IMG/VR virus record: IMGVR_UViG_3300031707_000001
Coordinates: 62,001-126,000 of that record
Length of the DNA: 64,000 bases
Direction: 5' to 3' (one strand)
Part shown: piece by piece, positions 22,312-53,941 of the stretch
Layout of the letters: every line of letters starts with the position of its first letter
Numbering within the stretch: position 1 is the first letter of the stretch
Notes under the pieces: generated by a model
Told to the model about the DNA's origin: nothing
Seen by the model: only the letters and a program-made list of their open reading frames with translations
Database searches by the model: none
Program-made: the position numbers and the translations under genes

Positions 22312-24295
22312 TTCACAAAGTCTATTTCCTTTTCCATATGAAGCTCCATCGGGTAGTCGCTCAGGGGCAAACAAATACCCCGATCCCTTTTGCGACATTG
22401 CCAGCACGTACGTTCCCCGGGACCTGAACATCATCTTTGAATGGATGGAGTATTTGTATCTGACCATGGGTACCTTCCGCACGGCCGCTCGCCGTGTAGT
22501 CCGCTATTTCCTTACCGAGATAGTTCTGGAAGGAGAATCAGATGCAGAACGTGATAAGTACGAAAAGTTCCTTCACGACGACTTAAACCTCATGAACAGT
22601 CTTGCCAATATTGGCGACGACTACATGGTTTATGGCAACGTATTTGTATCCATTTACTTTCCCTTTGATCGTTGGCTGATCTGTCCGCATTGCGGCATGG
22701 AATACCACTGCAAGACAGTAGACTACAAGTTCAACCTGGCCGACGGCAAGTTCAGCGGTAACTGTATCAAGTGTCACAAGGAACAGGTAGAATTCAAGCG
22801 TGAGGATCGCCGCTCACCCGATCGCAGCCGTGTACGTATCATTCGTTGGAACCCAAAGTTTATGCGTCTGCGTCATCATCCGATCAGCGGCAAGATCGAC
22901 TACTTCCTGGAAATGGAGCCGCTGTTCGTCAACCGCTTGCGTGCCGGCGAGAAGTTCTACATCGACGAGACACCGTGGTCCATGATCGAAGCCTGTCGCA
23001 CCAGCGCCAAGGATGCAGGCCGTGTACTGTTCAAGTTCCGAGACGATGCCATATTCCACTTCCGTGATGCTACCCTGTCTGGTATGGCGCCTACAGGCCC
23101 TCGTGGATGGGCTATTCCGCCTATGATGCCCAACTTCCGCTTGGCCTACTACATTCAATTGTTGCGCCGGTACGATGAAGCTATTGCATTGGACTTCATC
23201 ATGCCGTTCCGTGTGATCTACCCTGATCTGAACAAGGACAAGCAGGGAAGCGATCCGCTATCACTTATGAGCATGGGCAACTTCATTGGCCACATGACTC
23301 AGATGATCGAGAACAAGCGGCGCAACATTACGGATATTCAGATTGCGCCGTTTCCTATTGGCTACCAGATGTTGGGCGGCGAAGCCAAGGAGTTGGCGCC
23401 CAAGGATAGCATTGCCCAGGCTATTGACGAGCTTCTTAATGCCATGGGTTTCCCGGCTGAACTGTACCGGGGCAGCTTGTCCATACAGGCATTTCCAGTT
23501 GCGCTTCGACTGTTTGAAAAGAGCTGGGGCGCACTGGTGGATGGCATGAACGACTTCGTACGGTGGCTGCTTGAGCGTTTGTCCAGACACTTCATGTGGG
23601 GTCCGGTCACCGGGGAACTGCGCAGCGTAACGCTGGCAGATGACATTGAACGTAAGGCATTGGCTTTGCAGGCAGCAGCAGGAATGGATATCTCCAAGGC
23701 CACGGCTTACCGTCCGTTGGGTATCGACTATCTGGAAGAGCAGCGGCGTGTGGTCGAAGAGCAGGAAGAGATCATGAAGCTCCAGCAGGAAGCTATGGAG
23801 CGTCAACAGGCATCGCAGGGAGCGCCTCCAGGCGGTGGTGGCGGTGGACAGCCAGACCAAAGCGGTGGTGGTGGTGCTACTACGCAGCCTGGTGCAACTC
23901 CTGGCGACGTATACGAGCAGGGCAAGGCATTGGCACAGCAGCTATTGCTGCAGACTCCGCCTACAGCCCGTCGTGGCCAGTTGGTACAGATCAAGCATAC
24001 AAACCCAACGCTGCATGCTATCGTGTTGCAGGAGATGAACAACATGCGTCAGCAGTTTGCTTCCCAAGGACAGCAGGCCATGATGCAGCAAGCCGGTGCC
24101 AAGATGGCATCAGCCATAGACAAGCAGCTTGACAAGGTGCCTAGCCCATTCCTGATTGGCATATTGATTAGTGATCAGATATGCGATTATACCCGTAAGG
24201 ATTTGTCGAAGATAGCCATGGACGTAAAATATGGGGTGCCGTATGCCAAGGAAGCATTCCACTTCATATTCGAAAAAGTGAGAGGGCTGACGTGA
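22304..24295 (+). CDS. putative portal protein with Zn-ribbon insertion and Q/G-rich tail
   Basis: 663 aa near the head of the morphogenesis cluster; DYMVYGNVFV and IIRWNP resemble portal motifs; CPHC...CIKC insert. Confidence 0.5.
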   Translation: MGDSQSLFPFPYEAPSGSRSGANKYPDPFCDIASTYVPRDLNIIFEWMEYLYLTMGTFRTAARRVVRYFLTEIVLEGESDAERDKYEKFLHDDLNLMNSLANIGDDYMVYGNVFVSIYFPFDRWLICPHCGMEYHCKTVDYKFNLADGKFSGNCIKCHKEQVEFKREDRRSPDRSRVRIIRWNPKFMRLRHHPISGKIDYFLEMEPLFVNRLRAGEKFYIDETPWSMIEACRTSAKDAGRVLFKFRDDAIFHFRDATLSGMAPTGPRGWAIPPMMPNFRLAYYIQLLRRYDEAIALDFIMPFRVIYPDLNKDKQGSDPLSLMSMGNFIGHMTQMIENKRRNITDIQIAPFPIGYQMLGGEAKELAPKDSIAQAIDELLNAMGFPAELYRGSLSIQAFPVALRLFEKSWGALVDGMNDFVRWLLERLSRHFMWGPVTGELRSVTLADDIERKALALQAAAGMDISKATAYRPLGIDYLEEQRRVVEEQEEIMKLQQEAMERQQASQGAPPGGGGGGQPDQSGGGGATTQPGATPGDVYEQGKALAQQLLLQTPPTARRGQLVQIKHTNPTLHAIVLQEMNNMRQQFASQGQQAMMQQAGAKMASAIDKQLDKVPSPFLIGILISDQICDYTRKDLSKIAMDVKYGVPYAKEAFHFIFEKVRGLT

Positions 24296-25002
24296 ACAAA
24301 ATAGCAAGTTTTCGTTTAGATGCAGATTCTGCCTTGGTAAAGCTGTTAGACCAATTTTCGGCGAATCGGGCAGCGGCAAAAGCAAAGTCTGTCTATGACA
24401 ATGTAATGAAAGCTAAGGCTGTTCAAGACGCTGCAAGACAAGCTAAGGCCATTGAATCATCAGCAAAATCTAGAGTTGCAATGATAGCTCGGGCTATTCG
24501 AGAGGCCAACGAAAAGCTTCATCCTCAGGGAAATATCGGTTCTCAGGAATTAACTAAAGCGGTACCTGCAGTGCTTCCTTCAGAGAGTTTAGAAAAAGAG
24601 CGTATTGCTGCATTGCGTCGGGCTTATGCTGCCAAGACTCCAAGGAAGGAATTCAAACCTATTCCGACAACGTATCCGGTGAATCATGTTGTGGATACTT
24701 TCAAGCATATTGTAGGTACGCCACCGACTCCCACCGTACAGTTACCACCGGGAAAGAAGCCGCCGTTGGGTGATCTGCAAAGTTTGTTGATTACACCTAA
24801 GCAGGGAAGTGTAACACCTTACGAACAAGGTTTCATTACTAAAACGGCTGCGCTTCCACCTGAGGTTCGCTCAAGGCTGATGGTTTGGTTGCGTAAGATG
24901 TTTGGAATGGATAATACATCGCAGGCGCCCGGGGCTACACCTTTGGGATTGCCTGACGTTTCATCCGGATACGATCGTGTGTCGGCTATGCCTGTAAAAT
25001 AA
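24292..25002 (+). CDS. putative virion protein
   Basis: Contains YEQGFITKTAA motif. Confidence 0.6.
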   Translation: MNKIASFRLDADSALVKLLDQFSANRAAAKAKSVYDNVMKAKAVQDAARQAKAIESSAKSRVAMIARAIREANEKLHPQGNIGSQELTKAVPAVLPSESLEKERIAALRRAYAAKTPRKEFKPIPTTYPVNHVVDTFKHIVGTPPTPTVQLPPGKKPPLGDLQSLLITPKQGSVTPYEQGFITKTAALPPEVRSRLMVWLRKMFGMDNTSQAPGATPLGLPDVSSGYDRVSAMPVK

Positions 25003-25012
25003 GGAGCTTACC

Positions 25013-27291: not shown

Positions 27292-27397
27292 ATTTGTAGA
27301 CTTGCTATTTGAAAGATGTTTGTGCATACTATGTATCAAGTTACCGTTAAAAGAGTAGTATATTTCTGTTGACTAGTAAAGATAAAAGGGCGTAGTT

Positions 27398-27787
27398 ATG
27401 CTACCGAACATGACAAACGAGGAAGCTTATATGCAGGGATTCAACCATCGGTGTGGTGGAATGGGCGTCGATCCACGTAAACTCCTGGCCAAGTACGGAG
27501 CCCTGGCGCCGATCGGAGATCCGGCACAGCAGCAGATAAGTGGAAATTCGTCGTTGTTGGCAGCCGGAGGTATTTCGAATGCCACACAGGAAGCTATGAA
27601 GCCCGAGCTGTTGAAGAAGCAGTTGCCTGAAATATATCCCCAAGTCAAGATGCCCAAGATTGCCGACCACATCGAGAAACTGAAGAGAGACAGGCTTCTC
27701 AAGGACAGAAAGCCGGAGAGTCAAACTCCTGCAAATTCTATTGCACGTAAATCAATTGGAATGGCCGCAGGGCCCTATGGAACGTAA
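27398..27787 (+). CDS. putative internal head protein (GF..C..G+DP leader)
   Basis: AYMQGFNHRCGGMGVDPRKLLAKYGA. Confidence 0.6.
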   Translation: MLPNMTNEEAYMQGFNHRCGGMGVDPRKLLAKYGALAPIGDPAQQQISGNSSLLAAGGISNATQEAMKPELLKKQLPEIYPQVKMPKIADHIEKLKRDRLLKDRKPESQTPANSIARKSIGMAAGPYGT

Positions 27788-27796: not shown

Positions 27797-28309
27797 ATGA
27801 TCAAGTTAGCACAGTTGGAAGCTGCGTTGTCGAAGGTTAAGGGCGAAGTTAAAATCAAGAAGAGTTCAGCCAACTCTTTTTACCTGCAAGGTTTCATCCA
27901 GAAGTGTGCTGAAGCAGGTATGGATGCGGGACAGATCAAGCAGGCACTCGTTGACAAATTGATTAATGCGGGCCGACAGGTGGGAAAATATTTTGGTGGT
28001 TTGAAACATCAGTTTCGAGCAGGCAGGGATTATAACAAACTTTGGGGTAAAGATACTTGGGGAAAACAAGGTCCTTTCCGACCAAAAGATTTACCGGATG
28101 TAGCATACGGAGCTGGACACAAATATGACCAAATGCTTCAGAGTCCTGTCGGACAAGCTGTTGGATCAGCAGCCCACGGAGTCAGAGAAAATATGTCCCC
28201 ACTGATCCAATGGATAAAGCAGCATCCTATCTATGCTGGAGGTGTTGGTGTAGGTACCGCTGGAGCCGGCGCTGGACTACAAGCAGGTATTGGTGAAATG
28301 GGGGAATAA
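27797..28309 (+). CDS. putative internal head protein (leader family)
   Basis: FYLQGFIQKCAEAGMDAGQIKQA. Confidence 0.6.
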   Translation: MIKLAQLEAALSKVKGEVKIKKSSANSFYLQGFIQKCAEAGMDAGQIKQALVDKLINAGRQVGKYFGGLKHQFRAGRDYNKLWGKDTWGKQGPFRPKDLPDVAYGAGHKYDQMLQSPVGQAVGSAAHGVRENMSPLIQWIKQHPIYAGGVGVGTAGAGAGLQAGIGEMGE

Positions 28310-29634
28310 TGCCTCAGCCACCATCATATAGGAAAGCAGACGAACCCGGTAAGAACTGTGGTACGTGTAAGTACTTCTATCGGTTGGCCAACAATTGCCG
28401 CCGGTACAACTCTAAAGCGTTTGCCAGCATGGTATGCAGGACTTGGAAAGCAGGAATGCAGAAAGGTGCAGAGATGAAAGAATACTTTGAGACGTTGAGC
28501 AATACTGATCTTTCTTTCCAGGAAGGCTTCATTAAGGAATGCGTTGAGCGTGGAGTAGACCCGGAAGAGATGCTGAAAGTTGCACAGTTTTCTATAACAC
28601 CATCTCCAGGTTGGACGACACCCGTTGGTTCAAATCGAGGTGCTTTAGCTAATGCAGGAAGTGCATGGACAGCTCCTGGCCGAGCTTTAGGCCGTGGATT
28701 TCAAAGAATGAATCCACTCGGTTCGATGCGTTCTCAAGCAGCCGTTTATAACCAACCTATGCCTGGAGCAGGCTTTTCACAAGCAGCGGGATCAACAGCT
28801 GCAGGAACCAGTTCAGCTGATTTAAGAGGTATTCGGCGTAACGTTCAAGCAGGGAAGGCATCTCAGCTGGAACGTGGAATGTATTCTAATGTTCAACGTC
28901 AGGCTCCCGCAGTACCCGGCAAAGCAGCGCCAGCTCCAATTAACCCAACTAATCCACGAGGGGGTATGACTGCTCCAACTGCTGTTGCAGCAAAATCTTT
29001 GTCGCCTACAGCCATACCTGCACCAGCCGTGGCAAAGACGCCAGCTCCAGTTGTTGCTCCAACGCCAGCTGCAGTACCTACGGCACAAGCAGCGCCGGCA
29101 CAGCGAACTACAGGCGTATTCCAAGGTAATACTCCGTGGAGTCCTGGCCAATCGTTTACTCCGAAAAATTTGGGTACATCGCCAGCAGGTGGCGGCTACG
29201 CATATGGTACACGCCCAACTGCTGCACCGATGGCTGCACCACAACAACCTACCCAAACTCCTGCCGTTGCACAAGCAGCACAGCCAAAGCCAGGTCTGAC
29301 GTACCCGGCCGGCCATCTGGTCAATCAAGGAAAGAGTTTTCGTAAGCTGAGTCAGACCCTTGACGTAGACTATCTACGTAAGACGGCCGAGAAGCTTTGG
29401 GGAAAGAAAGCACAGGCTATTGATCCTATAAGAAATGGTGTATACGCAAACCCAAAGGCTATGGCAGTGTGGGGACAAGTGCCTCCGCAGGAACAGCAAA
29501 TGCAAAGCGCAAAGATGCCCGTAGAAGGAAAGCCCAATATGGTCGGTAGCGGAACAGCACCCGCACAGCAATTCAAAGCACAGCTTGCACAGGCAGGACA
29601 GAAGCCTACGCAACTTGACACCCCAACGTACTAA
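28309..29634 (+). CDS. putative internal head protein: 4-Cys N-domain, leader, long Ala/Pro/Thr-rich region
   Basis: CGTCKYF...C...VCRTW; FQEGFIKECVERGVDPEEMLKVA. Confidence 0.65.
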   Translation: MPQPPSYRKADEPGKNCGTCKYFYRLANNCRRYNSKAFASMVCRTWKAGMQKGAEMKEYFETLSNTDLSFQEGFIKECVERGVDPEEMLKVAQFSITPSPGWTTPVGSNRGALANAGSAWTAPGRALGRGFQRMNPLGSMRSQAAVYNQPMPGAGFSQAAGSTAAGTSSADLRGIRRNVQAGKASQLERGMYSNVQRQAPAVPGKAAPAPINPTNPRGGMTAPTAVAAKSLSPTAIPAPAVAKTPAPVVAPTPAAVPTAQAAPAQRTTGVFQGNTPWSPGQSFTPKNLGTSPAGGGYAYGTRPTAAPMAAPQQPTQTPAVAQAAQPKPGLTYPAGHLVNQGKSFRKLSQTLDVDYLRKTAEKLWGKKAQAIDPIRNGVYANPKAMAVWGQVPPQEQQMQSAKMPVEGKPNMVGSGTAPAQQFKAQLAQAGQKPTQLDTPTY

Positions 29635-29643: not shown

Positions 29644-30294
29644 ATGAAATTTGATAAGATGACAACTCGACAGTTGGACTACGTGGAAGGCTTCATTAAG
29701 AAGTGTGTTGCGCTGGGGGTGGACCCGGAAGTTGCAATAAAGAGTGCTGCTACCCCATACGATATCCCGGGTATGCCATGGGCAAACAATATGAGTGGCT
29801 CGTCTTCTTTGGAGACGGCACCAACATTTTCACAACAGCTGGGAAGAGGTTGGGGAAACGCAATGTCTTCATTGGGTAAAAGAATGGCCAAGCCGGATGT
29901 AAGCGGAAGCGTTGAAGGTTCTGGATGGGATCCACGTACCTGGGGAAGACGTTTGGGAAGAGGAATGTATAATTTATCCGAAGAGGGACGATTCCTGGAA
30001 GGTGCCAGAAATCCCACAGAACAGAAGAGCATGTTCAACATTGCTGGGCAGCAGGGTGCTGAATCTGGAACCCGGGCCGTAAGACAGATGTCAGATCTGG
30101 CAAGACGCCAGAAGGAATACGAGAGAACCACGGGCGGATTGTCCGGCCGTCAGTTCGTAAAAGGATCGCCCTATGCTCTTGGCCAGCCCAAGGCGCAATA
30201 TGGTGGCAAATTGCAACAGTACGAACCGCCAAAGAGAGTTGAACCGCCCAAGCTGCCATCCAAGCGTACGCCTGGGGCGCCTGTAGCGTTTTAA
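29644..30294 (+). CDS. putative internal head protein (leader family)
   Basis: YVEGFIKKCVALGVDPEVAIKSAA. Confidence 0.6.
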   Translation: MKFDKMTTRQLDYVEGFIKKCVALGVDPEVAIKSAATPYDIPGMPWANNMSGSSSLETAPTFSQQLGRGWGNAMSSLGKRMAKPDVSGSVEGSGWDPRTWGRRLGRGMYNLSEEGRFLEGARNPTEQKSMFNIAGQQGAESGTRAVRQMSDLARRQKEYERTTGGLSGRQFVKGSPYALGQPKAQYGGKLQQYEPPKRVEPPKLPSKRTPGAPVAF

Positions 30295-30308: not shown

Positions 30309-30827
30309 ATGAAGTTAGCAGAAATGAGCAATATGGACCTGGCCTACATCGAAGGATTCATTGAGAAGTGTGCTGCACACAAAGTGGATCCAGAACTGTT
30401 CTTGGAAGCATTGATGAGAAAATCGGCACAGGTTGAAGTACAGAAGCCTATGCCTGGTGGATCAGATACAGGACCCGCACAGTCTCCAGCCAAAGATCCG
30501 TCTACATACGTGCCATCTAACAAAGGTATTGGACGGAAAGTCAGCAAAGTTATAACGCTTCCCAAGTTGGGCGCCGCCGAGGAAGACGGACCTGATTATG
30601 AAGGTAGACGTCGGAAGACAATCGTAGGACTTGGTGCCGGACTTGGTGCAATTCCGGGAGGAATGGCGGGTGCTGCAGCAGGCGGCCGTCATCCTGGAAC
30701 TGGCGCACTTGTAGGTGCTGGAGTCGGAGCAGGATTGGGCGGAGGTGCAGCAATGATCTACAACGCAATCCGGAACTCTCTTGGATTCAGTGCTATGGGT
30801 ATGCCAGTCACAGAACAGAAGAAGTAA
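30309..30827 (+). CDS. putative internal head protein (leader family) with glycine-zipper segment
   Basis: YIEGFIEKCAAHKVDP...RKSA; GLGAGLGAIPGGMAGAAAG. Confidence 0.6.
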   Translation: MKLAEMSNMDLAYIEGFIEKCAAHKVDPELFLEALMRKSAQVEVQKPMPGGSDTGPAQSPAKDPSTYVPSNKGIGRKVSKVITLPKLGAAEEDGPDYEGRRRKTIVGLGAGLGAIPGGMAGAAAGGRHPGTGALVGAGVGAGLGGGAAMIYNAIRNSLGFSAMGMPVTEQKK

Positions 30828-30829: not shown

Positions 30830-31174
30830 ATGAACAAACCAGCATACATTTCATTGTTGACCCCCGAGGAACGTGCCGCATCTGTAAAGATGGGTGCTAT
30901 GCTGAAGTGCTCTGAACTAGGCATCAAGCAATCGGCCGTATCAGACGTAATCAATCCCACTAATGCTATGAAAGCCGTGGCTGTTGCCAGTTTGCTTACT
31001 GGCGTGCCCTTGGGCGTTGCCGCTCACATTATCGGGCGTCGGCTTACCGGTGTTGAGAATCGTGAGAAAGAGATGCAAGAGAAAATCAAATACTATCGAA
31101 ATGCAACACGTGGCCTGGAGACGGGTTTGGAAGCACCGGCCCGAGAAGATACGACTGAGAGCAGCGCTACGTAG
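30830..31174 (+). CDS. putative virion protein (degenerate leader)
   Basis: VKMGAMLKCSELGIKQSA followed by an amphipathic helix. Confidence 0.6.
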   Translation: MNKPAYISLLTPEERAASVKMGAMLKCSELGIKQSAVSDVINPTNAMKAVAVASLLTGVPLGVAAHIIGRRLTGVENREKEMQEKIKYYRNATRGLETGLEAPAREDTTESSAT

Positions 31175-33001: not shown

Positions 33002-36000
33002 ATGCCTCAGCTTCCGGAAAATCTCCGTGAGTTCGACGATACGGATAAGACCAGGGAACTCATTTACTCCAACGTAATGGATTCGCTGCAGAAGCGTTTT
33101 CCTATTGAGGACAACGAGTATCGTTTGGAACTATCCGGCCTGAAGTATTCTGGTCCTCAGCACTTTTCCCTTGACCAACAGAAACAAGCCCTGATGAAGG
33201 ATCGGCACTTGCACACTCCGATTACAGGGAAGTGGCGCTTGATGGACAAGGCCAACAATGCTGTACTTGGCGAGAAGGAAGACGTTGTAATGAACGTCCC
33301 GTACTACACGCCACGGGGAACATTCATCTTCAATGGCAACGAGTACAGTACAGTCAATCAGTCCCGTTTGAAGCCTGGTGCCTATACTCGTAAGCGTAAG
33401 ACGGGCGAAGTGGAAACGCAATTCAACGTACGGCCTGGGACCGGCCGGCCGTTCCATTTGCGTCTGGAACCAGAAACGGGTATCTTCCGCATCAGCGTTG
33501 AACAATCGAACATTCCTCTCTATACCCTGTTGAATACACTGGGCGTATCTGATAAGGAACTCATGCAGGCATGGGGTCCAGAGATGCTTGAAGCCAATAT
33601 CAAGAAGCAAGATAAGCGGGCCCTTCCAAAGATGTACGAACGTTTTTCGGGGTATAAGTACGATCCCAATGCCCGGGAAGACCAGATGAAGCAGTACATC
33701 AACGAGGCTTTGGCAAAGTTTGAATTGGACCCGGACGTCATGGCTCGTACGCTTGGCATTCGTGACACGAAGAACGTTACGCCACAGGCTCTTATTAGAG
33801 CCACGCAGAAGATGTTGAATGTATCCAAAGGCACAGAGGAGCCAGACGATCGTGATGCTCCAATGTACAGCAACATCTACAGCGTTGAAGATTTACTTCA
33901 GGAGCGCATAGACAAGGATGCCGGAAGACTGGCCAAGACATTACTGTATAAAGCACGTCGTACAAAGAACTTAGACCATGTACGTCGTGGGGCACTAGAT
34001 CCATACATCATGGGACAGAACGGGTTCCTTCTGGCCTCTCGATTGACAATGCCGTTGGAAGAAACCAATCCGCTGCATACGCTGGAGCAATCCGCCCGCA
34101 TTACCAAGTTGGGACAGGGCGGTATAAGCTCTGCCGAATCCATTACTGATGCAGCCCGGGACGTGAACAATGGGCAGTTTGGATTCGTTGACCCGATCAC
34201 TGGACCAGAGCACATCAACGTGGGTATTGACGTGCGTGCCGCTTACAAGAGTTTCAAGGGCAAAGACAAACAGATCTATGGGGAGTTCAGACATCCTGGA
34301 AGCGGAAAGATGTTCTACCTAAGACCTGAAGACGTAGCAGACAAAGCCGTGGCGTTTCCTGGCGAAATGAAGAAGCCAGGAGATACGGCTGTCGTTATGC
34401 AAAACGGGAAAATCAAACGAGTTGCGAAGCCAGAGGTTGACTTTGAGGTTCCATCCTTTGGTCACATGATGTCTTCGCATACGAACATGAATCCTATGCC
34501 AACAGCCGTCCTTCCTGGTCGGCAATTCTATGGCGCAAAATTCTGGAGTCAGTATCTGCCTATGGTAGACGGGGAAACCCCGTTGGTGGATTCTTTAACG
34601 CCAGAAGGCAAACAGACATTCGGTGAATACTACGGACGTAAGGTAGGAGCGCTGAATTCGAAGGTTGCGGGAACTGTAGCGAAAATCACAGATAACAGCA
34701 TTACCGTTGTTGGTGATGATGGTCAAAAACACGTTACTGAATTGGTGAAGGACTTCCCGTTTAACCGACTGACCGGGATCAGTTATTTCCCGGCCGTGAA
34801 GCCTGGAGACAGGGTGAATGTAGGTGATATGGTAGCTCACTCCAACTTCACGGACTCCAAGACGGGAGGGATTAACATGGGCCGCAACCTGAAGACCCTG
34901 ATGATGCCGGCCCGAGGTATGTCTTACGAAGATGCATATGTTATCAGCGAATCGGCCTCAAAGAAAATGACAACGGAGCGACTATATGGATTCGACCAGG
35001 AAAGCAGACAGGGCGTCGATATTGGAAAGAACAAGTTCATTTCAACCTTTGCCCAGAAATTCACCAAGGACCAGGTGTCCAACATTGACGACGAAGGCGT
35101 GGTCAAGCCCGGCACCGTTGTCAGCAAGGGCGATCCTCTCATCCTCGCTGTTGGACCTAAACTCCTTACCTCCGCCGACGCACAACTGGGCAAGCTGCAT
35201 AAAGTGCTGCGAAACGCCTTTACCGACAAATCCGTGATATGGGAATCCAACTATCCTGGTACAGTTACAGATGTGGCTATGACCGGGCATGGTGCCCGTG
35301 TGAACGTAAAGAGCATTCCGCCCGTTCAAGTCGGCGACAAGTTGTCCACACGGTTTGGACTGAAGGGTGTGGTTGGCCGTATTCTACCGGACGATCAGAT
35401 GCCCCGGGATCTGGTAACCAATGACCCCTATGATATGCTGCTCAATCCTATGGGCGTGCTGTCCCGTGTGGCGCCAAATCAGATCATTGAAATGAATCTG
35501 GCCAAGATTGCCAAGAAGACCGGCCAGCCTATTCGTTTACCCCAGGAGCCTCCTCCAGAAGGTTGGGCTGCTTGGGCCAAGAAGCAAATGGATGCAGCTG
35601 GCATCAAGGAAGACAATGACATCTTCGATCCAGTTACGGGAAAGACCATTAAGGGCGTATCAGATGGGTTTGTGTATACAGCGGCATTCCACCACTTGGC
35701 GGAAAAGAAGCTGTCTGCCCGTGGAGAGTCGGGTGCCTATACAATCGACGAACAGCCAGCCAAGGGTGGATTCGAAGGCGCCAAGCGATTCAGCCAGATG
35801 GACGTGAATGCTACGCTGGCACACGGTGCGCCCGAAGTCATTCGGGACGTACAGTTGATTCGTGGTACCAAGAATGAAGAGTTCTGGAAGGCCCTGAAGT
35901 TGGGCCGGCCACTACCCGAACCAACAGTTCCTTTTATCTATGACAAGTTCCTCAATACGCTTCGAGCAGGTGGCGTCAACGTGCAGGAAAAGGGGGACAT

Positions 36001-37394: not shown

Positions 37395-37610
37395 ATGACG
37401 GTAAAGCAAGCATACTTGTGTGGGTTTATTGAGAAACTGGCTGCTCCCCTGCTTGGCCTGGGATCATCTGATCCCCGGTTGATAAAGCAGATTGCAGATC
37501 AGCTACGTACGCTTATGCGAACCAACCCGATTGTTCCTCGTCCGGCATTACATCCAGCATACGCACAATTGGAGAACAAATACAGACCCGTCAAACTTTC
37601 GGACAGGTAA
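37395..37610 (+). CDS. small protein with leader-family motif
   Basis: KQAYLCGFIEKLAA. Confidence 0.55.
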   Translation: MTVKQAYLCGFIEKLAAPLLGLGSSDPRLIKQIADQLRTLMRTNPIVPRPALHPAYAQLENKYRPVKLSDR

Positions 37611-46851: not shown

Positions 46852-47762
46852 TGAAAGAAAAATCTGCTCAAGACTTCATGGAATCTATGCGCCGTGGCGT
46901 ATCGCAGGTTCCTGGTATGGCTTCCCAGGCTGGCGGGGCCATAAAGGATTGGTACAAGAATTTGAATCCAGATGCCCGCAATGCTGTCATGCGTGGTTTG
47001 ATGGGTGCTGGCATTGGTGCGGGGGTGACAGGCGGACTTTCTGCTTTGTCCCCACACGATCCCGAAGAAAAACGGCCTATAATGGGCCCGGCATTGATAG
47101 GTGCTTTGATGGGCGGCGGCGCCGCAGCCGGCATACCTTATGGCTTGAAACTACTGGCCAATAAGGCGCAGTTGCCTGGGGAAGAAAGCCGTCCGCTTGG
47201 GGCAAACATACTCGAAAAAGCAACAGGGCCTATTTTTACCCATCCTGCAACAACAGCCGGAGCCGCACTCGGAGGTGGAGCTCTTTATGCAGCCGGAAGA
47301 AAAGTCAAAGGTGAAAAACCAGGAACATACGTTCAGAGTGAATTGGGAAGAACGTGGGAATCAACTAAGGCACCTGTTGTTTCCAAACCTTCAATAGTCG
47401 AGTTGGCAAATAAGCTTAAGACTATGTATCACGGGGAAAAGGGGGAATTGGAAACTATGTGGGAATTGGCTTCTCGTTCCCCATCCGAATTGTTATCGTT
47501 GACTGTGCACGAAGATCCTACAATAAGAAATGTTGCCAAAACTATACTGTCGAATAAGGCTAAGCAATTGGCAAATCCTCAGACCTATACATCAGCGGCT
47601 AGGAAAGCACCCGGACAAATAACTCGGGGAGCGTTGGATTTGACTCGACGAATTAGGGATACCTGGAGGGCTAAGCCCGCAGGTAGAGCGTCCATGTTGG
47701 CGATTCCTGGAGGTATGGCCGCAGGAGCACTTCTGGATAGATATCTCAAAGGAGAATACTAA
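46851..47762 (+). CDS. Gly/Ala-rich amphipathic virion protein
   Basis: KSA at the N-terminus; glycine-zipper segments. Confidence 0.6.
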   Translation: MKEKSAQDFMESMRRGVSQVPGMASQAGGAIKDWYKNLNPDARNAVMRGLMGAGIGAGVTGGLSALSPHDPEEKRPIMGPALIGALMGGGAAAGIPYGLKLLANKAQLPGEESRPLGANILEKATGPIFTHPATTAGAALGGGALYAAGRKVKGEKPGTYVQSELGRTWESTKAPVVSKPSIVELANKLKTMYHGEKGELETMWELASRSPSELLSLTVHEDPTIRNVAKTILSNKAKQLANPQTYTSAARKAPGQITRGALDLTRRIRDTWRAKPAGRASMLAIPGGMAAGALLDRYLKGEY

Positions 47763-49183
47763 TGATTAAGTTGATTTACTCATCGGCGTTTGACACAACC
47801 GTGGACGTTGGTATGCGGTTGATTGAGGATCCTAGACAACTTAGCAAGTCTGCTTCAACAGTGTTTGATTGTGACTATGATACGATAAAGCCCGATAAGG
47901 ATCACCTGGGGATTCATTTGGTGGCCTTGGGTGACTTCGAGCACTATGGTATCAATCGCAATGGGGACGGATTCCCGAAAGCAGCATGCGCTAAGTATCA
48001 CGATACGTTTGTAAAGAATGGCGCTCTTTTCCGTCATCACCGCAATAAGGATCGTGAAGCCCGTTTGGGACAAGTCGTAAAGTCAGCTTACAATGAGCCA
48101 ATGGGACGCATCGAATTGTTCATTCATGCACATAAGGAAAAGGCTCGTGATGAATTGCAGAAGCTGGCGACTGAGGGTGATATCCCATTCAGCATGGCTT
48201 GCAAAGTAGCTTTTGATCGGTGTACAGTATGTAACACACTTCGGAAATCCTCAAAAGATCCAGATCAGTGCGAACACGTACTCATGAATTTAGGTAAGGT
48301 GGCCGACGACGGCAAAGTGACTGGCACCCAAAACGATGAACCTAACTTCTTTGACATCAGTTTCGTAACACGGCCGGCTGACCGGATTGCGTGGCATCTA
48401 AAGGCCGCATCCAACGAGATCATTGATTCAGTAAAACTGGCAGAAGCAGAAGGAATCTGGGTGCCAGATCACCTCGTCATTGTATCCCCGGAAGCACAGG
48501 ACAAGTTGGAACTGTTGAAGAAGTTGGCTGAGGAAGAACTCCACTATAAAGGCAGGGTTTGTGGTTGGATTGGTGCCACTGCCCGTCAACGCTACGATTG
48601 GGAGCTTCGAAAGGCAGCATCAACTCCAATGGATGACAAGTTGATTGAGGAATTACGTAAGCATGAACCCAAAGACGTCTTTTACAAATTGGCGTCAAAG
48701 GGCATCATCATGGATGTACGTTCTTTCTTTAAGTATGCCATGGGTTTGGATTTTGGTGATATCGCCGGATATGTGGATCAGGTACAGAAGCGAGCAGGAG
48801 GCGTATATACCCGAATGGTTGAATCCGGCCGTTGTCAGGAAGCATGCAACGATCGATTATTCGATGTTGATGTTTCTACCGGCGGTAACGACGTGCCGTC
48901 TATTACGACCAAAATAGCAGAGGAACTTACATTAGTTGGTCCTTGTATGGAACAACGCATTATCGAAACAACGATTAAGTATGGTGAAGAATTCAAACCA
49001 CAGATAGTGGTTGACACGAAACACGAAATAGAGTCTAATGATACTTTGACGGTAGATGCATTGGCTGAAAAATATGCTGCCTACAAATTGGCAGCCATTC
49101 AGGCCGTGCGAGCTATCAATAAGAATACTGATACGGATGCGCTGATTGCGATTGCGGCAGCGCAGAACTTGTTCACTAACTAA
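47762..49183 (+). CDS. putative prohead maturation protease with Zn finger
   Basis: NRNGDGFP, LFRHHRNKD, FSMACKV..D.CTVC...C.H, FFDISFV..PAD; directly upstream of scaffold, decoration and capsid genes. Confidence 0.65.
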   Translation: MIKLIYSSAFDTTVDVGMRLIEDPRQLSKSASTVFDCDYDTIKPDKDHLGIHLVALGDFEHYGINRNGDGFPKAACAKYHDTFVKNGALFRHHRNKDREARLGQVVKSAYNEPMGRIELFIHAHKEKARDELQKLATEGDIPFSMACKVAFDRCTVCNTLRKSSKDPDQCEHVLMNLGKVADDGKVTGTQNDEPNFFDISFVTRPADRIAWHLKAASNEIIDSVKLAEAEGIWVPDHLVIVSPEAQDKLELLKKLAEEELHYKGRVCGWIGATARQRYDWELRKAASTPMDDKLIEELRKHEPKDVFYKLASKGIIMDVRSFFKYAMGLDFGDIAGYVDQVQKRAGGVYTRMVESGRCQEACNDRLFDVDVSTGGNDVPSITTKIAEELTLVGPCMEQRIIETTIKYGEEFKPQIVVDTKHEIESNDTLTVDALAEKYAAYKLAAIQAVRAINKNTDTDALIAIAAAQNLFTN

Positions 49184-49196
49184 CGGAGATAGATCC

Positions 49197-50645
49197 ATGT
49201 CAACAATGCAGGAAATTCTCGCTTCTACACGTAAACTTATCGAAGTCAAGAAAGCAGAGTTCAATAGTACTCTGAAGAAGGCTGACGATAAGGCACTGAA
49301 CAACACAGGGGCGGGCGATGATAGCCCAATCACTCGTGGTCATGCGTTGGATGCTACGCAGTCAGCGCTTGAACCTACAAAGAAGCCCTTGATTACTTCT
49401 GATGCTATGACAGCACAGCCTCCTTCGGACGGTAAAGGCACAAAGGCTGATCTGAAGGGCAAGAACGAAGGCAACGTGACAGACCGTGCTGACAAGTTGG
49501 AAGCCGGCGATGCCGTTCTGGAGCCTAAGAAAGAGCCCTTGATTACATCAGATGCAAAGGCCGATCCCGAAGCAGGAGCCTCGGGTCAGACAGCAAAGCA
49601 AGCCACAGCAAAGTTGGCCAATGAGATCCTGAAGGACATTCGGGAATATCAGCAGAAGCAAGCTGCGCCGAAGGCTAAGCAGGACGTGAAAGCGGATGCA
49701 AAAGTAGCTTCGACGAAGAAAGCTGATCCAGATCCGGACCCCGATCCAGATCCCGATCCAGATCCGGACCCTGATCCCGATCCAGATCCGGACCCTGATC
49801 CAGGCAAGGGAAAGAAAGGCAAGAAGGTTGTAAAAGAGGAAGATAAGAAGGAAGCTTCTGGTCCTCAGCTTGAGTTGACAACTGACGTGTTGGCCAAGAT
49901 TGCCTCGATCGTACTTTCTTCTGAAGAAGGTGCACAGTTTGTGGAAGGCCAGCTTGCCAAGGCAGCCGGTGCAGAAGCTGCACAGGAGACTTTGGCTTTT
50001 TTGGCAGAACAGTCCGAACTGGCTGAAAAACAGGCTGCTTTCGAGCAGGGTCAGGCGGACGCCGAAGCATTGATTCAGCAAGCGCTGTATCAGGCCGGTC
50101 GGGAAGCGGGCCAAAAAGAAGCAGCGGCAGCTCAACAGAATAAGTTGATGGCGGGTCTGGGACAGAAAGTTGCCCAGGCAGGCATCGATGAAATGATGGG
50201 CGCTGGTGCTGCTCCTATGGAAGGTGGCGCTGGTGGAGCCGGCGGACCGGATGTTGGCGCCGCAGAACTAGCTGGTGGAGCTGGTGGAGCTGGTGGCGTT
50301 GGTGGAGCCGGCGAAGCTGGTGGGGAAATCACAGAAGAAGATCTGATGATGGCTCTTCAAGCATTGGTGCAGGAAGGCACAATTCAGCCCGAGGAAGCTC
50401 AGGCGGTTGTGGAGGCCTTGACGGGCGGCGGAGCGGGTGGTGAAGCGGCAGGAGCAGCTCCTGCAGCAGCCCCTGAGGCAGCTCCTGCGGAAGCACCAGC
50501 TGCAGTAGGTGGTGCAGAACACGAGGCATCTGAAACTCCTGAAAAGGAAAAGAAAGAAGAGAAGGAATCTTCTGAAAAGTCAGTTGAGAAGAAAGCCGCT
50601 GCTCTTCTGGATGCCATCCGTCAGGTCCGTGCAAGTCGTAAGTAA
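49197..50645 (+). CDS. putative scaffolding protein with (DP)13 repeat
   Basis: Charged, low-complexity helical protein between protease and capsid genes; duplicated LE....LEP.K.PLITSDA. Confidence 0.6.
   Translation: MSTMQEILASTRKLIEVKKAEFNSTLKKADDKALNNTGAGDDSPITRGHALDATQSALEPTKKPLITSDAMTAQPPSDGKGTKADLKGKNEGNVTDRADKLEAGDAVLEPKKEPLITSDAKADPEAGASGQTAKQATAKLANEILKDIREYQQKQAAPKAKQDVKADAKVASTKKADPDPDPDPDPDPDPDPDPDPDPDPDPGKGKKGKKVVKEEDKKEASGPQLELTTDVLAKIASIVLSSEEGAQFVEGQLAKAAGAEAAQETLAFLAEQSELAEKQAAFEQGQADAEALIQQALYQAGREAGQKEAAAAQQNKLMAGLGQKVAQAGIDEMMGAGAAPMEGGAGGAGGPDVGAAELAGGAGGAGGVGGAGEAGGEITEEDLMMALQALVQEGTIQPEEAQAVVEALTGGGAGGEAAGAAPAAAPEAAPAEAPAAVGGAEHEASETPEKEKKEEKESSEKSVEKKAAALLDAIRQVRASRK
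49725..49802 (+). repeat. 13 x 6-bp GAY-CCN coding repeat (Asp-Pro)
   Basis: gat cca gat ccg gac ccc ..., 13 dipeptides counted. Confidence 0.95.
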
Positions 50646-51622: not shown

Positions 51623-52576
51623 ATGGATACACAGAATGTACCAGTATCAGTCATCAATGCGAGAATCCTGGAGCACCTGGATCGTGATGAGGTAAAGAAG
51701 GCTCAGGACGCTGCTACGGATTACACCCGTATGCAAGTCCGTGAAGAGTCTTTTGCCTTCAAGATTCTTCCGCCTGAAAAGGCGACAGACGACATGCTCG
51801 ATAGAGATATCGACGAACGTCTGCGTATCATCTGGGAAAAAGAACCAGACAACCCACCTTCTAAGTGGGTGCCTCTGCAAACGATTCCGGACGGTGAATA
51901 TATCACGGGAAGCCGTTATATCATTCCGTTCGCTCGTGTTCTGACTCCCAAGTTCGTAAAGGACATCGATGAGTTGCGTACTTATCGGTTGGACATCCGC
52001 AAGATTCTGACCGACAACTCGATCAAGGACGCTTTGGCCGAGATCGACAGCAAGTTCATCGCCACGGTCAACTCGATCGTACGGAATACGATGAGTGGTG
52101 GAGCTGGATCGCCTCAGAAAGAGACGAAAAAGGTCCAGTGGATCGACGTGACGGATCCGTTGAATCGTCAGTCCTTTGCGGAAGCAAAGAAAATGCTGCC
52201 TCGTGGCAACGCTAACGGCAAGTACCGTCTGCGCAACTACATCGCTCTGATGAACGATGTAACCGCACAGGACTGGCTGAAGCTTGACAGGTTGGCAGTC
52301 GGCGGTGATCTGGCCCAGGACTTCTTCAAGAACGGTCTGACAACAGATACGTTCTTCGGCGTGAAGGCAATCTTCACGATCAAGGATAACCTGGTTCCAG
52401 ATAACTACGTGTACTTCTTCGCAGCACCGGAATTTCTGGGCAAGTGCTTCTACTTGACAGACTGGACGATGTTCATGAAGAAGGAAGCGTATTTCATCGA
52501 AATGTTCAGCTACTGGCTGGGCGGATTTGCATTCGGTAACATCGCAGGATGTGCCCTTTGCCGGTTCAATCAGTAA
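51623..52576 (+). CDS. major capsid protein (HK97-like fold, inferred)
   Basis: 317 aa, AAAGGAG RBS, C-ending codon bias, follows protease/scaffold/decoration, and is followed by a strong terminator. Confidence 0.7.
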   Translation: MDTQNVPVSVINARILEHLDRDEVKKAQDAATDYTRMQVREESFAFKILPPEKATDDMLDRDIDERLRIIWEKEPDNPPSKWVPLQTIPDGEYITGSRYIIPFARVLTPKFVKDIDELRTYRLDIRKILTDNSIKDALAEIDSKFIATVNSIVRNTMSGGAGSPQKETKKVQWIDVTDPLNRQSFAEAKKMLPRGNANGKYRLRNYIALMNDVTAQDWLKLDRLAVGGDLAQDFFKNGLTTDTFFGVKAIFTIKDNLVPDNYVYFFAAPEFLGKCFYLTDWTMFMKKEAYFIEMFSYWLGGFAFGNIAGCALCRFNQ

Positions 52577-52595
52577 GTACTGGATTCGGTGAAGT

Positions 52596-53306
52596 TCAAA
52601 CACGAATATATCGGGGAGCCAGGACAGCCTGGCTCCCCTTTTTAATCGAAAGCCATGCTTTGAACTTTCCATCCTTCGCTAGAAGGTGATCGATGCTATG
52701 ACAGTTAGGGCAAACAACTTCTATGTTTATTGGATCGTTGTTGCTATGGTTTCGATCTTTATGATGTCGTTCCAAAATTTCAGGATATTTGTCAAAACCG
52801 CAACGGTCACATTCGATCATTTGTGTTCGAGGAACCGTTTTGGCAGGATCTGTTTTTCGAATATACCCTACGAACCGGTGAAGAGATCCACAACGCCGAG
52901 AACAGTATCTATGGGTTTTTCTGGAAGTTGTAAATATCTTATTACAGTATTCACACGTTTTTGTTATGAGTGGTTTTCGCAAGCGTTGAGTTCGGCATTC
53001 TTGACTACAACAGAATTGTTTCGAACTACTAGGAACAGTTGCGAATTGTTTACCACAAACAATACAGTTCTTTGTTATTTTCGTAAGTATCTTTCCACGT
53101 CTGGAAGCAAAACTTGGCCGGGCACAGGCAATAGAACAGAACTTGTTCTTAGATGTAAATTCCTTGTTGCATGTCGGACACCTTTTAGTTATGATGTTCT
53201 TGCGCTTGAAAAGGCCGGCGCACTTTCGTGAACAGGCTCGTTTGTGAGGATGCTTGGAATCCACAAACGGAAGATGACAGGTGATACATAGTTTAGTAGT
53301 TTTCAT
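52596..53306 (-). CDS. free-standing HNH endonuclease, paralogue of 26578-27291
   Basis: CDRCGFDKYPEILERHHKDRNHSNNDPINIEVVCPNCHSIDH; four CxxC..F..CS..C repeats. Confidence 0.85.
   Translation of the reverse strand: MKTTKLCITCHLPFVDSKHPHKRACSRKCAGLFKRKNIITKRCPTCNKEFTSKNKFCSIACARPSFASRRGKILTKITKNCIVCGKQFATVPSSSKQFCCSQECRTQRLRKPLITKTCEYCNKIFTTSRKTHRYCSRRCGSLHRFVGYIRKTDPAKTVPRTQMIECDRCGFDKYPEILERHHKDRNHSNNDPINIEVVCPNCHSIDHLLAKDGKFKAWLSIKKGSQAVLAPRYIRV
52613..52643 (+). terminator. intrinsic terminator after the major capsid gene
   Basis: GGGGAGCCAGG/CCTGGCTCCCC followed by TTTTT. Confidence 0.8.
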
Positions 53307-53323
53307 GATAGGAGATTACCAGT

Positions 53324-53941
53324 ATGCCACTAACAAGTAAAGGTAAAAAGATACTTTCTGCTATGGAGCGCCCGGAATCTGAGGGCGGCTATGGTACTAA
53401 GAAGGGTAAGGAAGTATTCTACGCTTCGCAGAACAAGGGCACCATCGAAGGTACGCACAAGACCAGTGAAGTACACAGCCCACAATGGCTTGAAGGATTT
53501 ACCAAAGCCGCCAACGATTTAGGTCTGACAGATCCGGATCAGGTTGTAGCACTATTGAAGACAGCACAGCGTTTGCACTTCATGCATACGCATCCTGATG
53601 CTTTTGACGCCGGCTATACAGCTGAGATGACAAAGAAGGGAATGAACAAAGAAGCCGGTCCTTGGGGTGCTATGAAGACTTTGGGTCTTTTGGGCGCCGG
53701 CGCAGCGGGCATGGTGGGAGCACAGGCCGCAGGACGTAACATGGGCATACGGCCATTCAATCGTCAGCTTTGGACAGTCGAAGATTTTCAAAATGCTGCA
53801 AAAGAATATCAGGACATTGCCGGCCGAGTACGTCCGCATACGAGTCCGTTTGGAATGATGGGGCAGCAGGGTATGTACGGTGGCCCGAATCGCATGGGTT
53901 ATTTCTCTCCGACCGGCGGCTACTACACCAGTCCATACTAA
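53324..53941 (+). CDS. putative internal head protein (MPLT.KGKKI N-module + leader motif)
   Basis: WLEGFTKAANDLGLTDPDQVVALLKTA; KEA followed by an amphipathic segment. Confidence 0.6.
   Translation: MPLTSKGKKILSAMERPESEGGYGTKKGKEVFYASQNKGTIEGTHKTSEVHSPQWLEGFTKAANDLGLTDPDQVVALLKTAQRLHFMHTHPDAFDAGYTAEMTKKGMNKEAGPWGAMKTLGLLGAGAAGMVGAQAAGRNMGIRPFNRQLWTVEDFQNAAKEYQDIAGRVRPHTSPFGMMGQQGMYGGPNRMGYFSPTGGYYTSPY

What the first reader, a model, noticed from the sequence alone, without database searches (positions are those of the whole stretch)
24292..53941. Shared leader motif (Y/F)x(Q/E)GF..KC...G+DP....KxA on at least nine virion-module proteins
Seen in ORFs 24292, 27398, 27797, 28309, 29644, 30309, 30830 (degenerate), 37395 and 53324. 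It is usually followed by K-x-A and then an unrelated G/A/P-rich segment; K-x-A also recurs in the scaffold and other head proteins. Established: T4 internal proteins use a short capsid-targeting sequence removed by the prohead protease. Inference: a modular capsid-targeting/processing tag used to package and inject a cargo of peptides, potentially usable for protein delivery.
Basis: partly seen in the sequence, partly recalled or inferred. Interest (0 to 1): 0.6.

Follow-up and report, generated by a model that had tools for sequence, protein, structure and literature searches.

The report
Shared hairpin tag on phage head proteins
A 210-kb uncultured phage puts the same undescribed 28-residue helical hairpin on six to nine otherwise unrelated, positively charged proteins encoded among its head genes; this most likely marks them for loading into the capsid, as T4 does with a shorter tag, but nothing here shows packaging or cleavage.

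Summary
The motif is real. Five adjacent ORFs (27398, 27797, 28309, 29644, 30309) match a profile built only from other genomes at E 3e-9 to 5e-13. ORF 37395 is significant (E 0.006). ORFs 24292 and 53324 are supported only through orthologues or profile-profile comparison. ORF 30830 has no statistical support.

The motif belongs to a large family absent from Pfam and the searched literature. At least 581 protein clusters share the consensus MNEAYxQGFIxKCAExGVDPExLxKxA. Every genomic context examined belongs to one uncultured clade of 180-210 kb phages. No match was found in Arash or Vibrio phage D69 (profile search), GenBank phages (tblastn, one member) or 185,579 prokaryote genomes (one exact 8-residue pattern).

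AlphaFold2 models it confidently as helix-turn-helix; the rest is disordered. The tails are mutually unrelated, rich in G/A/P, and net positive in 146 of 150 cases. Copies (6-10 per genome) lie inside the portal-to-capsid gene block. That block also encodes a protease with the T4 gp21/herpesvirus fold (Z 11.3).

The best reading is a docking module for internal or ejected head proteins, functionally like the T4 capsid-targeting sequence. It is not always N-terminal. "K-x-A" is simply the end of helix 2, and cleavage there is unsupported. One complex prediction gave no verdict.

The parts
27419..27502 (+). Canonical motif copy in ORF 27398-27787 (129 aa), residues 8-35: EEAYMQGFNHRCGGMGVDPRKLLAKYGA
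   Evidence: Independent HMM E 2.8e-9; coordinates
27872..27949 (+). Canonical motif copy in ORF 27797-28309 (170 aa), residues 26-51, after an N-terminal helix. The tail ends in a glycine-zipper stretch.
   Evidence: HMM E 8e-11. Orthologues P0007 and P0008 keep the motif internally at about residue 135
28507..28587 (+). Canonical motif copy in ORF 28309-29634 (441 aa), residues 67-93. It is preceded by a Cys-rich module (28321-28446) and followed by a 338-aa A/P/Q-rich tail of net charge +24.
   Evidence: HMM E 1.7e-11; the L003 orthologue keeps it; tail statistics
29671..29751 (+). Canonical motif copy in ORF 29644-30294 (216 aa), residues 10-36
   Evidence: HMM E 4.5e-13. In orthologues P0002-P0004 (43-63% identity) the N-terminal motif is the best-conserved part
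30336..30413 (+). Canonical motif copy in ORF 30309-30827 (172 aa), residues 10-35. The tail has six overlapping GxxxGxxxG matches.
   Evidence: HMM E 8e-13. AlphaFold2: residues 1-40 have pLDDT 83-95 (block means), with helix 8-23, a turn, then helix 28-41; the rest is below 70
37404..37496 (+). Degenerate copy in ORF 37395-37610 (71 aa), directly after the RNA polymerase beta gene: AYLCGFIEKL...SDPRLIKQIA. Cys is replaced by Leu and the turn carries an insertion of about six residues.
   Evidence: HMM E 0.0064
24814..24879 (+). Degenerate half-copy (PYEQGFITKTAALPPEV) near the C-terminus of ORF 24292-25002, the gene directly after the portal
   Evidence: HMM E 0.073. The post-portal ORF of G001 (L012 3828-4400) has two weak copies
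53480..53569 (+). Divergent motif-like hairpin (WLEGFTKAANDLGLTDPDQVVALLKTAQ) in ORF 53324-53941, downstream of the major capsid protein
   Evidence: Not found by the HMM. The orthologue profile (window, L008, L014) against the motif profile gives hhalign probability 79%, E 1.6e-5
30875..30949 (+). Possible remnant copy (VKMGAMLKCSELGIKQSAV) in ORF 30830-31174, followed by a hydrophobic segment
   Evidence: Visual similarity only; no HMM support
22304..24295 (+). Portal protein
   Evidence: tblastn to Arash gp204, annotated portal: 27% identity over 595 aa, E 1e-78
33002..37393 (+). Multisubunit RNA polymerase beta / beta-prime N-terminal fusion (1463 aa), probably packaged in the virion
   Evidence: PHROG RNA polymerase beta hits. 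30% identical to Arash gp206, the protein with the most spectra in Arash virions (PMC10585845)
39743..41602 (+). RNA polymerase beta-prime C-terminal subunit (619 aa)
   Evidence: PHROG hits; similarity to Arash gp216; PF04998 on orthologues
47762..49183 (+). Prohead protease. The N-domain (residues 44-205) has the T4 gp21/herpesvirus assemblin fold; invariant Ser144 lies in IPFSMACKV; the C-terminal domain is helical.
   Evidence: AlphaFold2 mean pLDDT 79.6. VIA-align: 5jbl_B T4 gp21 Z 11.3, rmsd 2.8 A, 127 aligned residues; herpesvirus proteases Z 7-9. Invariant columns
49197..50645 (+). Probable scaffolding protein: acidic, Ala/Glu-rich and helical, with a (DP)n run and a basic C-terminal helix
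   Evidence: Position between protease and capsid protein, and composition; conserved blocks in three orthologues. This is an inference, not a family match.
51623..52576 (+). Major capsid protein (317 aa)
   Evidence: tblastn to Arash gp226, annotated major capsid protein, E 4e-39; 62-65% identical orthologues

Best explanation
The motif is a small autonomous helix-turn-helix docking module of about 28 residues. Its consensus is MNEAYxQGFIxKCAExGVDPExLxKxA, with near-invariant G, F, K, C, A, G, D and P. It is carried by a set of otherwise unrelated, basic, largely disordered proteins, some of which have glycine-zipper hydrophobic stretches. I propose that it tethers these proteins to a common component of the assembling prohead core (scaffold, protease or inner shell surface). 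They would then be enclosed in the capsid, lie with the DNA through their basic tails, and leave with it at infection. In function this resembles the T4 capsid-targeting sequence and the conserved N-termini of internal and ejection proteins in phiKZ/SPN3US-type giant phages. What is shown: the motif exists and is significant; its fold is predicted with high confidence; the family is wide; the tails are modular and basic; the genes lie inside the head module; and a gp21-fold protease is present. What is inferred: presence in the virion, the binding partner, ejection, and any proteolytic removal. If removal happens, its site is unknown.
For: 1. Significance: five copies score E 3e-9 to 5e-13 with a profile that contains no sequence of this genome.
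2. Family: 581 clusters at E<=1e-3 among 1.84 billion representatives. The motif lies within the first 15 residues in 81% of the best 145, and conservation ends sharply after K-x-A.
3. Fold: AlphaFold2 block-mean pLDDT 83-95 for residues 1-40 as a two-helix hairpin, with the remainder disordered.
4. Modularity: the window paralogues' tails share no significant similarity. The same motif is fused to a Cys-rich module in either order (ORF 28309 and P0037) and to DUF3008.
5. Tails: 146 of 150 are net positive (median +7 over a median 108 aa), against 56 of 86 window ORFs (median +2). G+A+P is 0.33 against 0.23.
6. Context: in G000, G001 and the contigs behind L004, L008, L010, L015, L023 and L024, copies lie between the portal and the major capsid protein, at varying positions among the conserved genes. 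In L006 two copies sit beside a terminase-like gene. G001 has 9 copies, 8 of them in its head block.
7. Machinery: ORF 47762 has the T4 gp21 fold (Z 11.3), and a scaffold-like gene follows it.
8. Precedent: T4 internal proteins carry a 10-19-residue targeting propeptide on diverse basic proteins (PMC9026906, PMC3012670). SPN3US gp53 and gp54 share identical N-termini on diverged internal proteins (PMC5694885).
Against: 1. There is no proteomic or structural evidence that any motif protein is in a virion. The clade has no cultured member, and the motif is absent from the nearest cultured phages, Arash and Vibrio phage D69.
2. The complex prediction of the motif against capsid protein plus scaffold fragment scored 0.02 and gave no verdict.
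3. The motif is internal in 24 of the best 145 family members and occurs in 2-3 copies in 16 of them. It is internal in several window proteins. A pure cleavable leader would not behave like this.
4. At least one borderline copy in G000 (33955-34662), and one copy in G001 (80.9 kb), lie outside the head block.
5. No conserved (L/I/S/A/G)-x-E site marks the motif boundary, unlike substrates of the phage proteases of this fold (PMC5694885).
6. Glycine-zipper tails would equally fit membrane proteins acting in the infected cell.
Confidence: 0.5

Rival explanations
1. The hairpin is a homo- or hetero-oligomerisation module. It bundles the different carriers with each other, possibly locked by the invariant cysteine as a disulfide once the particle leaves the reducing cytoplasm. 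The result would be one complex, such as an inner body or ejection channel, rather than binding to scaffold or shell. This overlaps with the best explanation as to location but differs in the partner.
For: The amphipathic two-helix hairpin is too small to hold a core of its own. Cys is 98% conserved, which ordinary helix packing does not require. Tandem copies occur within single proteins (P0013, P0014, P0025, P0090). There are 6-10 carriers per genome. The structural neighbours, all weak (Z <= 4.2), include several dimerisation or docking hairpins.
Against: The Cys is replaced in the divergent copies 37395, 24292 and 53324. Fold matches at Z <= 4.2 carry no weight.
Confidence: 0.2
2. The carriers are not virion proteins. 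They are late-expressed proteins that act in the infected cell, for example on the membrane or in host takeover. The hairpin would be a shared interaction domain for a phage or host factor, for instance the phage RNA polymerase whose genes they flank.
For: The tails include glycine-zipper and hydrophobic stretches (46 of 150 with GxxxGxxxG; 38 with a 19-residue hydropathy of 1.2 or more). Motif genes directly abut RNA polymerase genes in the window (37395) and in L004, L010, L015, L024 and G001. Copies occur outside the head block.
Against: The RNA polymerase genes themselves lie inside the head block, and their Arash homologues are the most abundant virion proteins by spectra, so adjacency does not separate the two models. 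The uniformly basic, disordered tails fit DNA-associated internal proteins better. Positions vary among head genes but almost never leave that block.
Confidence: 0.15
3. The architecture is that of leader plus core, as in ribosomally made peptides or bacteriocins: a conserved leader, a hypervariable Gly/Ala-rich core and many paralogues.
For: There is a formal resemblance: conserved N-terminal segment, variable tail, multiple tandem genes. One member gave a weak hit to the double-glycine bacteriocin family (E 0.0016).
Against: The tails are 70-340 residues, not peptides. No modification enzyme or export gene is nearby. The genes are embedded in head-morphogenesis operons of a lytic phage clade. 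The exact pattern GFIDKCAE found no confirmed relative in 185,579 prokaryote genomes.
Confidence: 0.03

Closest known systems
T4 capsid-targeting sequence (CTS) of internal proteins IPI, IPII, IPIII and Alt
   Same: A short conserved segment, usually N-terminal, is shared by otherwise diverse, basic proteins. There are several carriers per genome. The phage has a gp21-fold prohead protease and a separate scaffold. The concept of a portable packaging tag applies (PMC9026906, PMC3012670).
   Different: It is 28-30 residues and predicted to fold as a helix-turn-helix, not 10-19 residues. No homology has been shown. It is sometimes internal or in tandem. No (L/I)-x-E site lies at its end. It has a near-invariant Cys. 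Neither packaging nor cleavage is demonstrated.
Internal and ejection protein paralogue families of phiKZ/SPN3US-type giant phages (PF12699 family; gp53/gp54 N-termini)
   Same: These are large phages with a virion multisubunit RNA polymerase and a gp21-like protease. They have variable numbers of head-internal paralogues whose N-termini are conserved while the rest diverges (PMC5694885).
   Different: No Pfam hit of any kind, so none to PF12699 either. Here the tails are unrelated rather than paralogous. Propeptides there are often longer than 100 residues and end in A/S/G-x-E. The RNA polymerase architecture also differs: a 1463-aa fusion plus a 619-aa subunit.
C-terminal helix-turn-helix coat-binding domain of the P22 scaffolding protein
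   Same: It is a small two-helix hairpin acting as a docking unit during procapsid assembly (from general knowledge; not tested here).
   Different: The position in the protein and the charge pattern differ. No sequence or significant structural match was obtained (best fold matches Z <= 4.2).
Encapsulin cargo-loading peptides
   Same: A short portable tag directs diverse cargo into an HK97-fold shell (general knowledge).
   Different: Those tags are C-terminal, extended and about 10 residues long, and no protease is involved. No similarity was tested or seen.

Membership tests
T4-type capsid-targeting sequence | Located at the extreme N-terminus of the carrier | tested here: inconclusive
   81% of the best 145 family members carry it within the first 15 residues. 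In the window that holds for only 4 of 9 copies; the others are internal or C-terminal.
T4-type capsid-targeting sequence | Short propeptide of 10-19 residues ending in the protease site (L/I)-x-E | tested here: not met
   The conserved block is about 28 residues, is predicted to fold as a hairpin and ends in K-x-A-(Q). No conserved Glu marks the boundary.
T4-type capsid-targeting sequence | The phage encodes a gp21-family prohead protease and a core/scaffold | tested here: met
   The ORF 47762 model matches T4 gp21 (5jbl_B) with Z 11.3, rmsd 2.8 A over 127 residues. A scaffold-like ORF follows at 49197-50645.
T4-type capsid-targeting sequence | The tag is sufficient to package a protein into proheads and is then removed | not testable with these tools
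   This needs virion or procapsid biochemistry. The only computational attempt gave no verdict.
phiKZ/SPN3US inner-head paralogue family (PF12699) | Sequence match to the family profile | tested here: not met
   Pfam scans of the five canonical window carriers plus 24292 and 53324 (E <= 0.1), and of 142 family members, returned no PF12699 hit.
Any curated protein family covering the motif (Pfam-A, PHROGs v4) | Profile match over the motif | tested here: not met
   Pfam gave no family on the five canonical carriers. PHROGs gave none over the motif; its only hit, phrog_5880, falls on the tail of ORF 30309. Across 142 members no Pfam family recurs in more than four.
Prohead protease of the T4 gp21 / herpesvirus assemblin fold (for ORF 47762) | Assemblin fold with a conserved Ser and His residues | tested here: met
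   Fold match. Ser144 and His52, 80, 93, 122 and 172 are invariant in 34 homologues. Which of them are catalytic was not assigned residue by residue.

The most novel reading that the evidence does not exclude
The hairpin is a self-contained, portable capsid-loading tag of a widespread uncultured clade of 180-210 kb phages. It would be a second, independently evolved and structurally different counterpart of the T4 CTS. The phage would use it to load a changeable set of basic DNA-associated and membrane-active proteins, and perhaps adaptors for the virion RNA polymerase. Its invariant cysteine would act as a redox latch: cross-linked in the oxidised particle and released in the reducing host cytoplasm.
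Probability: 0.25. Interest if true: 0.75.

Novelty: new variant of a known kind. Interest (0 to 1): 0.55.

Why it matters
How giant phages choose which proteins go into the head is largely unknown outside T4. Here a single, sharply defined and confidently folded 28-residue module marks the candidate internal proteins of a whole abundant environmental phage clade. There are more than 580 protein clusters carrying it and more than 1,300 clusters of the clade's protease. That gives a concrete handle in three ways. It lets candidate packaged proteins be listed from sequence alone in uncultured genomes. It offers a defined peptide to test for binding to scaffold, protease or shell in a recombinant procapsid system. 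If it works as proposed, it would be a new tag for loading proteins into large capsids. If the carriers turn out not to be virion proteins, the family is still a new, strongly constrained interaction domain with an unexplained invariant cysteine.

Tried and rejected
- Complex prediction of the motif (ORF 30309, residues 1-45) against major capsid protein plus scaffold residues 230-499: score 0.02, no verdict. I do not use it as evidence either way.
- Fold search with the hairpin model: only generic two-helix matches, Z <= 4.2. The ESM Atlas look-up of the motif was uninformative.
- K-x-A as a general cleavage signal: [LVIM]K.AQ occurs 10 times against 3.5 expected genome-wide, with 5 in the head block. 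Two of those five are motif or motif-like copies; the other three include the N-termini of ORFs 27797 and 45026. The crude gene set also missed the capsid protein. The head-protein sites show no consistent position. I treated this as not established.
- C-A-E inside KCAE as a phiKZ-like small-x-Glu site: the Glu is absent from three of the five window copies (27398, 29644, 30309) and from the 29644 orthologues P0002-P0004. Rejected as a general site.
- The N-terminus of ORF 45026 (GVDPNRAVIKAAQ) as a further copy: its orthologues lack the pattern. Rejected.
- A weak motif-like stretch in Arash gp220 (E 0.19): not significant, kept only as a lead.
- Plus-strand ORFs 26779-27312 and 52686-53231: these are shadows of minus-strand HNH genes.
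- L016-L021 are false positives.
- No reads tools were used, and no other genetic code was needed.

Full report
**Setting.** The window is bases 62001-126000 of a single 210,732-bp virus contig, G000. Almost all genes are on the + strand, and there are no tRNAs. I located the head genes by similarity to Salmonella phage Arash:
- portal, 22304-24295 (Arash gp204, E 1e-78)
- a 1463-aa RNA polymerase beta / beta-prime N-terminal fusion, 33002-37393 (gp206, 30% identity)
- beta-prime C-terminal subunit, 39743-41602 (gp216)
- homologues of the Arash structural proteins gp218, gp220 and gp222 at 41641, 45026 and 47762
- major capsid protein, 51623-52576 (gp226)

In Arash virions gp206 gave the most spectra (PMC10585845), so this polymerase is probably packaged. 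Arash and Vibrio phages D69, D148 and D181 are the nearest cultured relatives, at only about 30% identity. Metagenomes, by contrast, hold a large clade. The protease ORF 47762 alone has 1,302 homologous clusters, many on contigs of 190-211 kb.

**Is the motif there?** Yes. Reading the translations shows [YF]x[QE]GFxxKCxxxG[VM]D[PA] in five consecutive ORFs: 27398, 27797, 28309, 29644 and 30309. To avoid circularity I built a profile from 157 motif segments taken only from other genomes and searched all 3,991 six-frame segments of G000. The results were:
- the five canonical ORFs: E 4.5e-13 to 2.8e-9
- ORF 37395: E 0.0064
- ORF 24292: E 0.073
- an ORF outside the window (G000:33955-34662): E 0.075
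- ORF 53324: not significant
- ORF 30830: not detected

ORF 24292 follows the portal directly. Its positional counterpart in the complete 190-kb relative G001 carries two recognisable copies. For 53324, a profile of three orthologues (conserved WLEGF..AAE..G....L[LI]K.A) aligns with the motif profile at hhalign probability 79%, E 1.6e-5. I therefore count six solid copies, two probable ones and one unsupported (30830). Chance is excluded for the core.

**What the motif is.** A profile of 12 copies was searched against 1.84 billion representative proteins. It found 581 clusters at E <= 1e-3 and 20 at E <= 1e-10. The family consensus is M-N-E-A-Y-V-Q-G-F-I-D-K-C-A-E-x-G-V-D-P-E-x-L-V-K-x-A-Q. 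Conservation is G 100%, F 99%, C 98%, A 93%, D 93%, G 91%, K 90%, P 90%, and it collapses immediately after K-x-A-(Q).

In the best 145 members, the Tyr lies within six residues of Met1 in 75 and within fifteen in 117. Twenty-four carry the motif beyond residue 40. Sixteen have two or three copies.

No curated family covers it. Pfam gave nothing on the window carriers. PHROGs gave nothing over the motif. Pfam over 142 members gave only scattered tail hits (DUF3008, Gly-zipper families). The motif strings occur in no searchable paper.

AlphaFold2 on ORF 30309, with an 87-row alignment, models residues 1-40 at block-mean pLDDT 83-95. The model is helix 8-23, a four-residue turn at the G-x-D-P position, then helix 28-41. 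The other 130 residues are below 70. The "K-x-A" of the finding therefore sits inside helix 2 of a folded hairpin. A fold search with so small a unit gave only generic matches (Z <= 4.2).

**What it is attached to.** The tails of the window carriers share no significant similarity with each other (best E 0.048 in a ten-sequence database). This is a shared module on different proteins, not a set of whole-gene duplicates. The exception is the 29644/30309 pair, which also share the residues before the motif.

The module recombines with other mini-domains:
- The Cys-rich segment at the N-terminus of ORF 28309 lies C-terminal to the motif in P0037.
- DUF3008 is fused to the motif in L010 and in one family member.

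Across 150 tails the median length is 108 residues and G+A+P is 0.33, against 0.23 for the window proteome. Forty-six have a GxxxGxxxG pattern. Most strikingly, 146 are net positive (median +7), whereas only 56 of 86 window ORFs are positive (median +2). Among orthologues of ORF 29644 (43-63% identity) the motif is the most conserved part.

**Where the genes lie.** In the window the copies run from just after the portal to just after the capsid protein. The five canonical ones lie in a 9-kb stretch between portal and RNA polymerase beta. Arash and D69 have only a single ~95-aa ORF in that interval.

Other clade members also keep the copies inside the same conserved block, but at different places:
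- after the gp218-like gene in L008, L010, L014 and L023
- after RNA polymerase beta-prime in L024 and G001
- before beta-prime in L004 and L015
- before and after the portal in G001
- in L006, two copies beside a terminase-like gene

G001 has nine distinct copies, eight of them in its first 26 kb.

No match was found in the complete records of Arash and D69 (profile search), in 50,697 GenBank phage records by tblastn with one member, or in 185,579 prokaryote species genomes using one exact 8-residue pattern. These last two searches are narrow, so they show that close copies are missing, not that the motif is absent everywhere. Within those limits, every context found belongs to an uncultured, apparently lytic sub-clade.

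**Assembly machinery.** ORF 47762 had no sequence-level family. Its AlphaFold2 model (mean pLDDT 79.6) superposes on the T4 prohead protease gp21 with Z 11.3, rmsd 2.8 A over 127 residues. Herpesvirus assemblins follow at Z 7-9 (Foldseek alone was not significant). Ser144 and five His residues are invariant in 34 homologues. The next ORF (49197-50645) is acidic, Ala/Glu-rich and helical, with a basic C-terminal helix, and is conserved in blocks. I read it as the scaffold. So the phage has the T4 type of core-plus-protease head maturation.

**Explanation.** T4 loads about 1,000 copies of diverse basic internal proteins into the prohead core through a shared 10-19-residue N-terminal propeptide, which gp21 then removes. 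Related T-even phages carry other basic proteins with similar tags (PMC9026906, PMC3012670). SPN3US/phiKZ-type giant phages, which also have a gp21-like protease and a virion RNA polymerase, have variable paralogue families of internal and ejection proteins with conserved N-termini (PMC5694885).

The present family reproduces that logic. There is one conserved module, many unrelated basic tails, genes inside the head block, and a gp21-fold protease. I therefore consider a docking or capsid-loading role the most likely (about 0.5).

It is not a member of the T4 CTS family:
- it is longer and folded
- it has an invariant Cys
- it is not always terminal
- it lacks the Glu-P1 site

Whether it is cleaved is open. 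K-x-A is the end of helix 2. Enrichment of K-x-A-like patterns in head proteins is weak and largely self-generated. The alternative site C-A-E is not conserved in the window copies.

Internal and tandem copies, together with the invariant Cys, keep an oligomerisation-hub model alive (about 0.2). A non-virion role in the infected cell is also possible (about 0.15). A bacteriocin-like leader is very unlikely.

The one complex prediction allowed (motif against capsid protein plus scaffold fragment) returned no verdict. It is not used as evidence.

**Verdict.** It now has better circumstantial support but no direct evidence, and its cleavage claim is unsupported. The family itself appears undescribed. 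As a system it is a new variant of a known kind, a capsid-targeting or docking tag. Interest is moderate to high (0.55), because it offers a precise, testable handle on protein loading in an abundant, uncultured group of large phages.

Noticed in passing
window 26578-27339 (-) and 52596-53306 (-): Two paralogous free-standing HNH homing-endonuclease-like genes (43% identity, E 1e-42; motif HHKDxNHxNxDPxNIEVVCPNCH, with repeated Cys-rich zinc-finger-like units). They are the only clear minus-strand genes in the head block. Each lies just upstream of a motif gene (27398 and 53324). The long + strand ORFs 26779-27312 and 52686-53231 are their shadows.
   Followed up: partly
G000:33955-34662 (outside the window, about 28 kb upstream of its start): A tenth, borderline motif copy (KEAYWIGFSLRCTSHGTTPEVIFAAGT; E 0.0024 with the first profile, 0.075 with the independent one). 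It sits in the middle of a 235-aa protein encoded among non-structural-looking genes.
   Followed up: partly
window 28321-28446; L008 10001-10213: A Cys-rich mini-module (YRKAD...C..C.........C.........C..W) precedes the motif in ORF 28309 but follows it in the 70-aa protein P0037 of a 176-kb relative. Small modules are shuffled among these proteins.
   Followed up: partly
window 53324-53470: The N-terminus of ORF 53324 (MPLTSKGKKILSAMERPESEGGYGTKKGKEVFYASQNKGTIEG) looks like another portable mini-domain. It is absent from the orthologues in L008 and L014, which start directly with the motif-like hairpin.
   Followed up: no
window 49146-50645: The scaffold-like protein contains an uninterrupted run of about 16 Asp-Pro dipeptides and two copies of a conserved LEP.K.PLITSDA element in its N-terminal half.
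   Followed up: no
window 38361-38945; L004 1092-1631: A conserved Gly/Pro/Met-rich protein with repeated 'APMDPSMMGGAGG' units and a C-terminal helix is encoded upstream of the RNA polymerase beta-prime gene, both in the window and in a relative.
   Followed up: no
L001 35490-35560 (Arash gp220, annotated structural protein): A weak motif-like stretch (VEGLLKTAAAVGKDPDALSKIAA), E 0.19 and not significant. It may hint at an older, Cys-less relative of the hairpin inside a conserved head protein.
   Followed up: no
window 33002-37393 and 39743-41602: The RNA polymerase is arranged as one 1463-aa beta plus beta-prime N-terminal fusion and a 619-aa beta-prime C-terminal subunit, both embedded in the head block. 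This arrangement is conserved across the clade, and in Vibrio phages D181 and D148 it is interrupted by a homing endonuclease.
   Followed up: partly
P0245: One protease homologue is deposited under a Verrucomicrobiota metagenome-assembled genome (78-kb contig). This is a possible but unreliable host hint for the clade.
   Followed up: no
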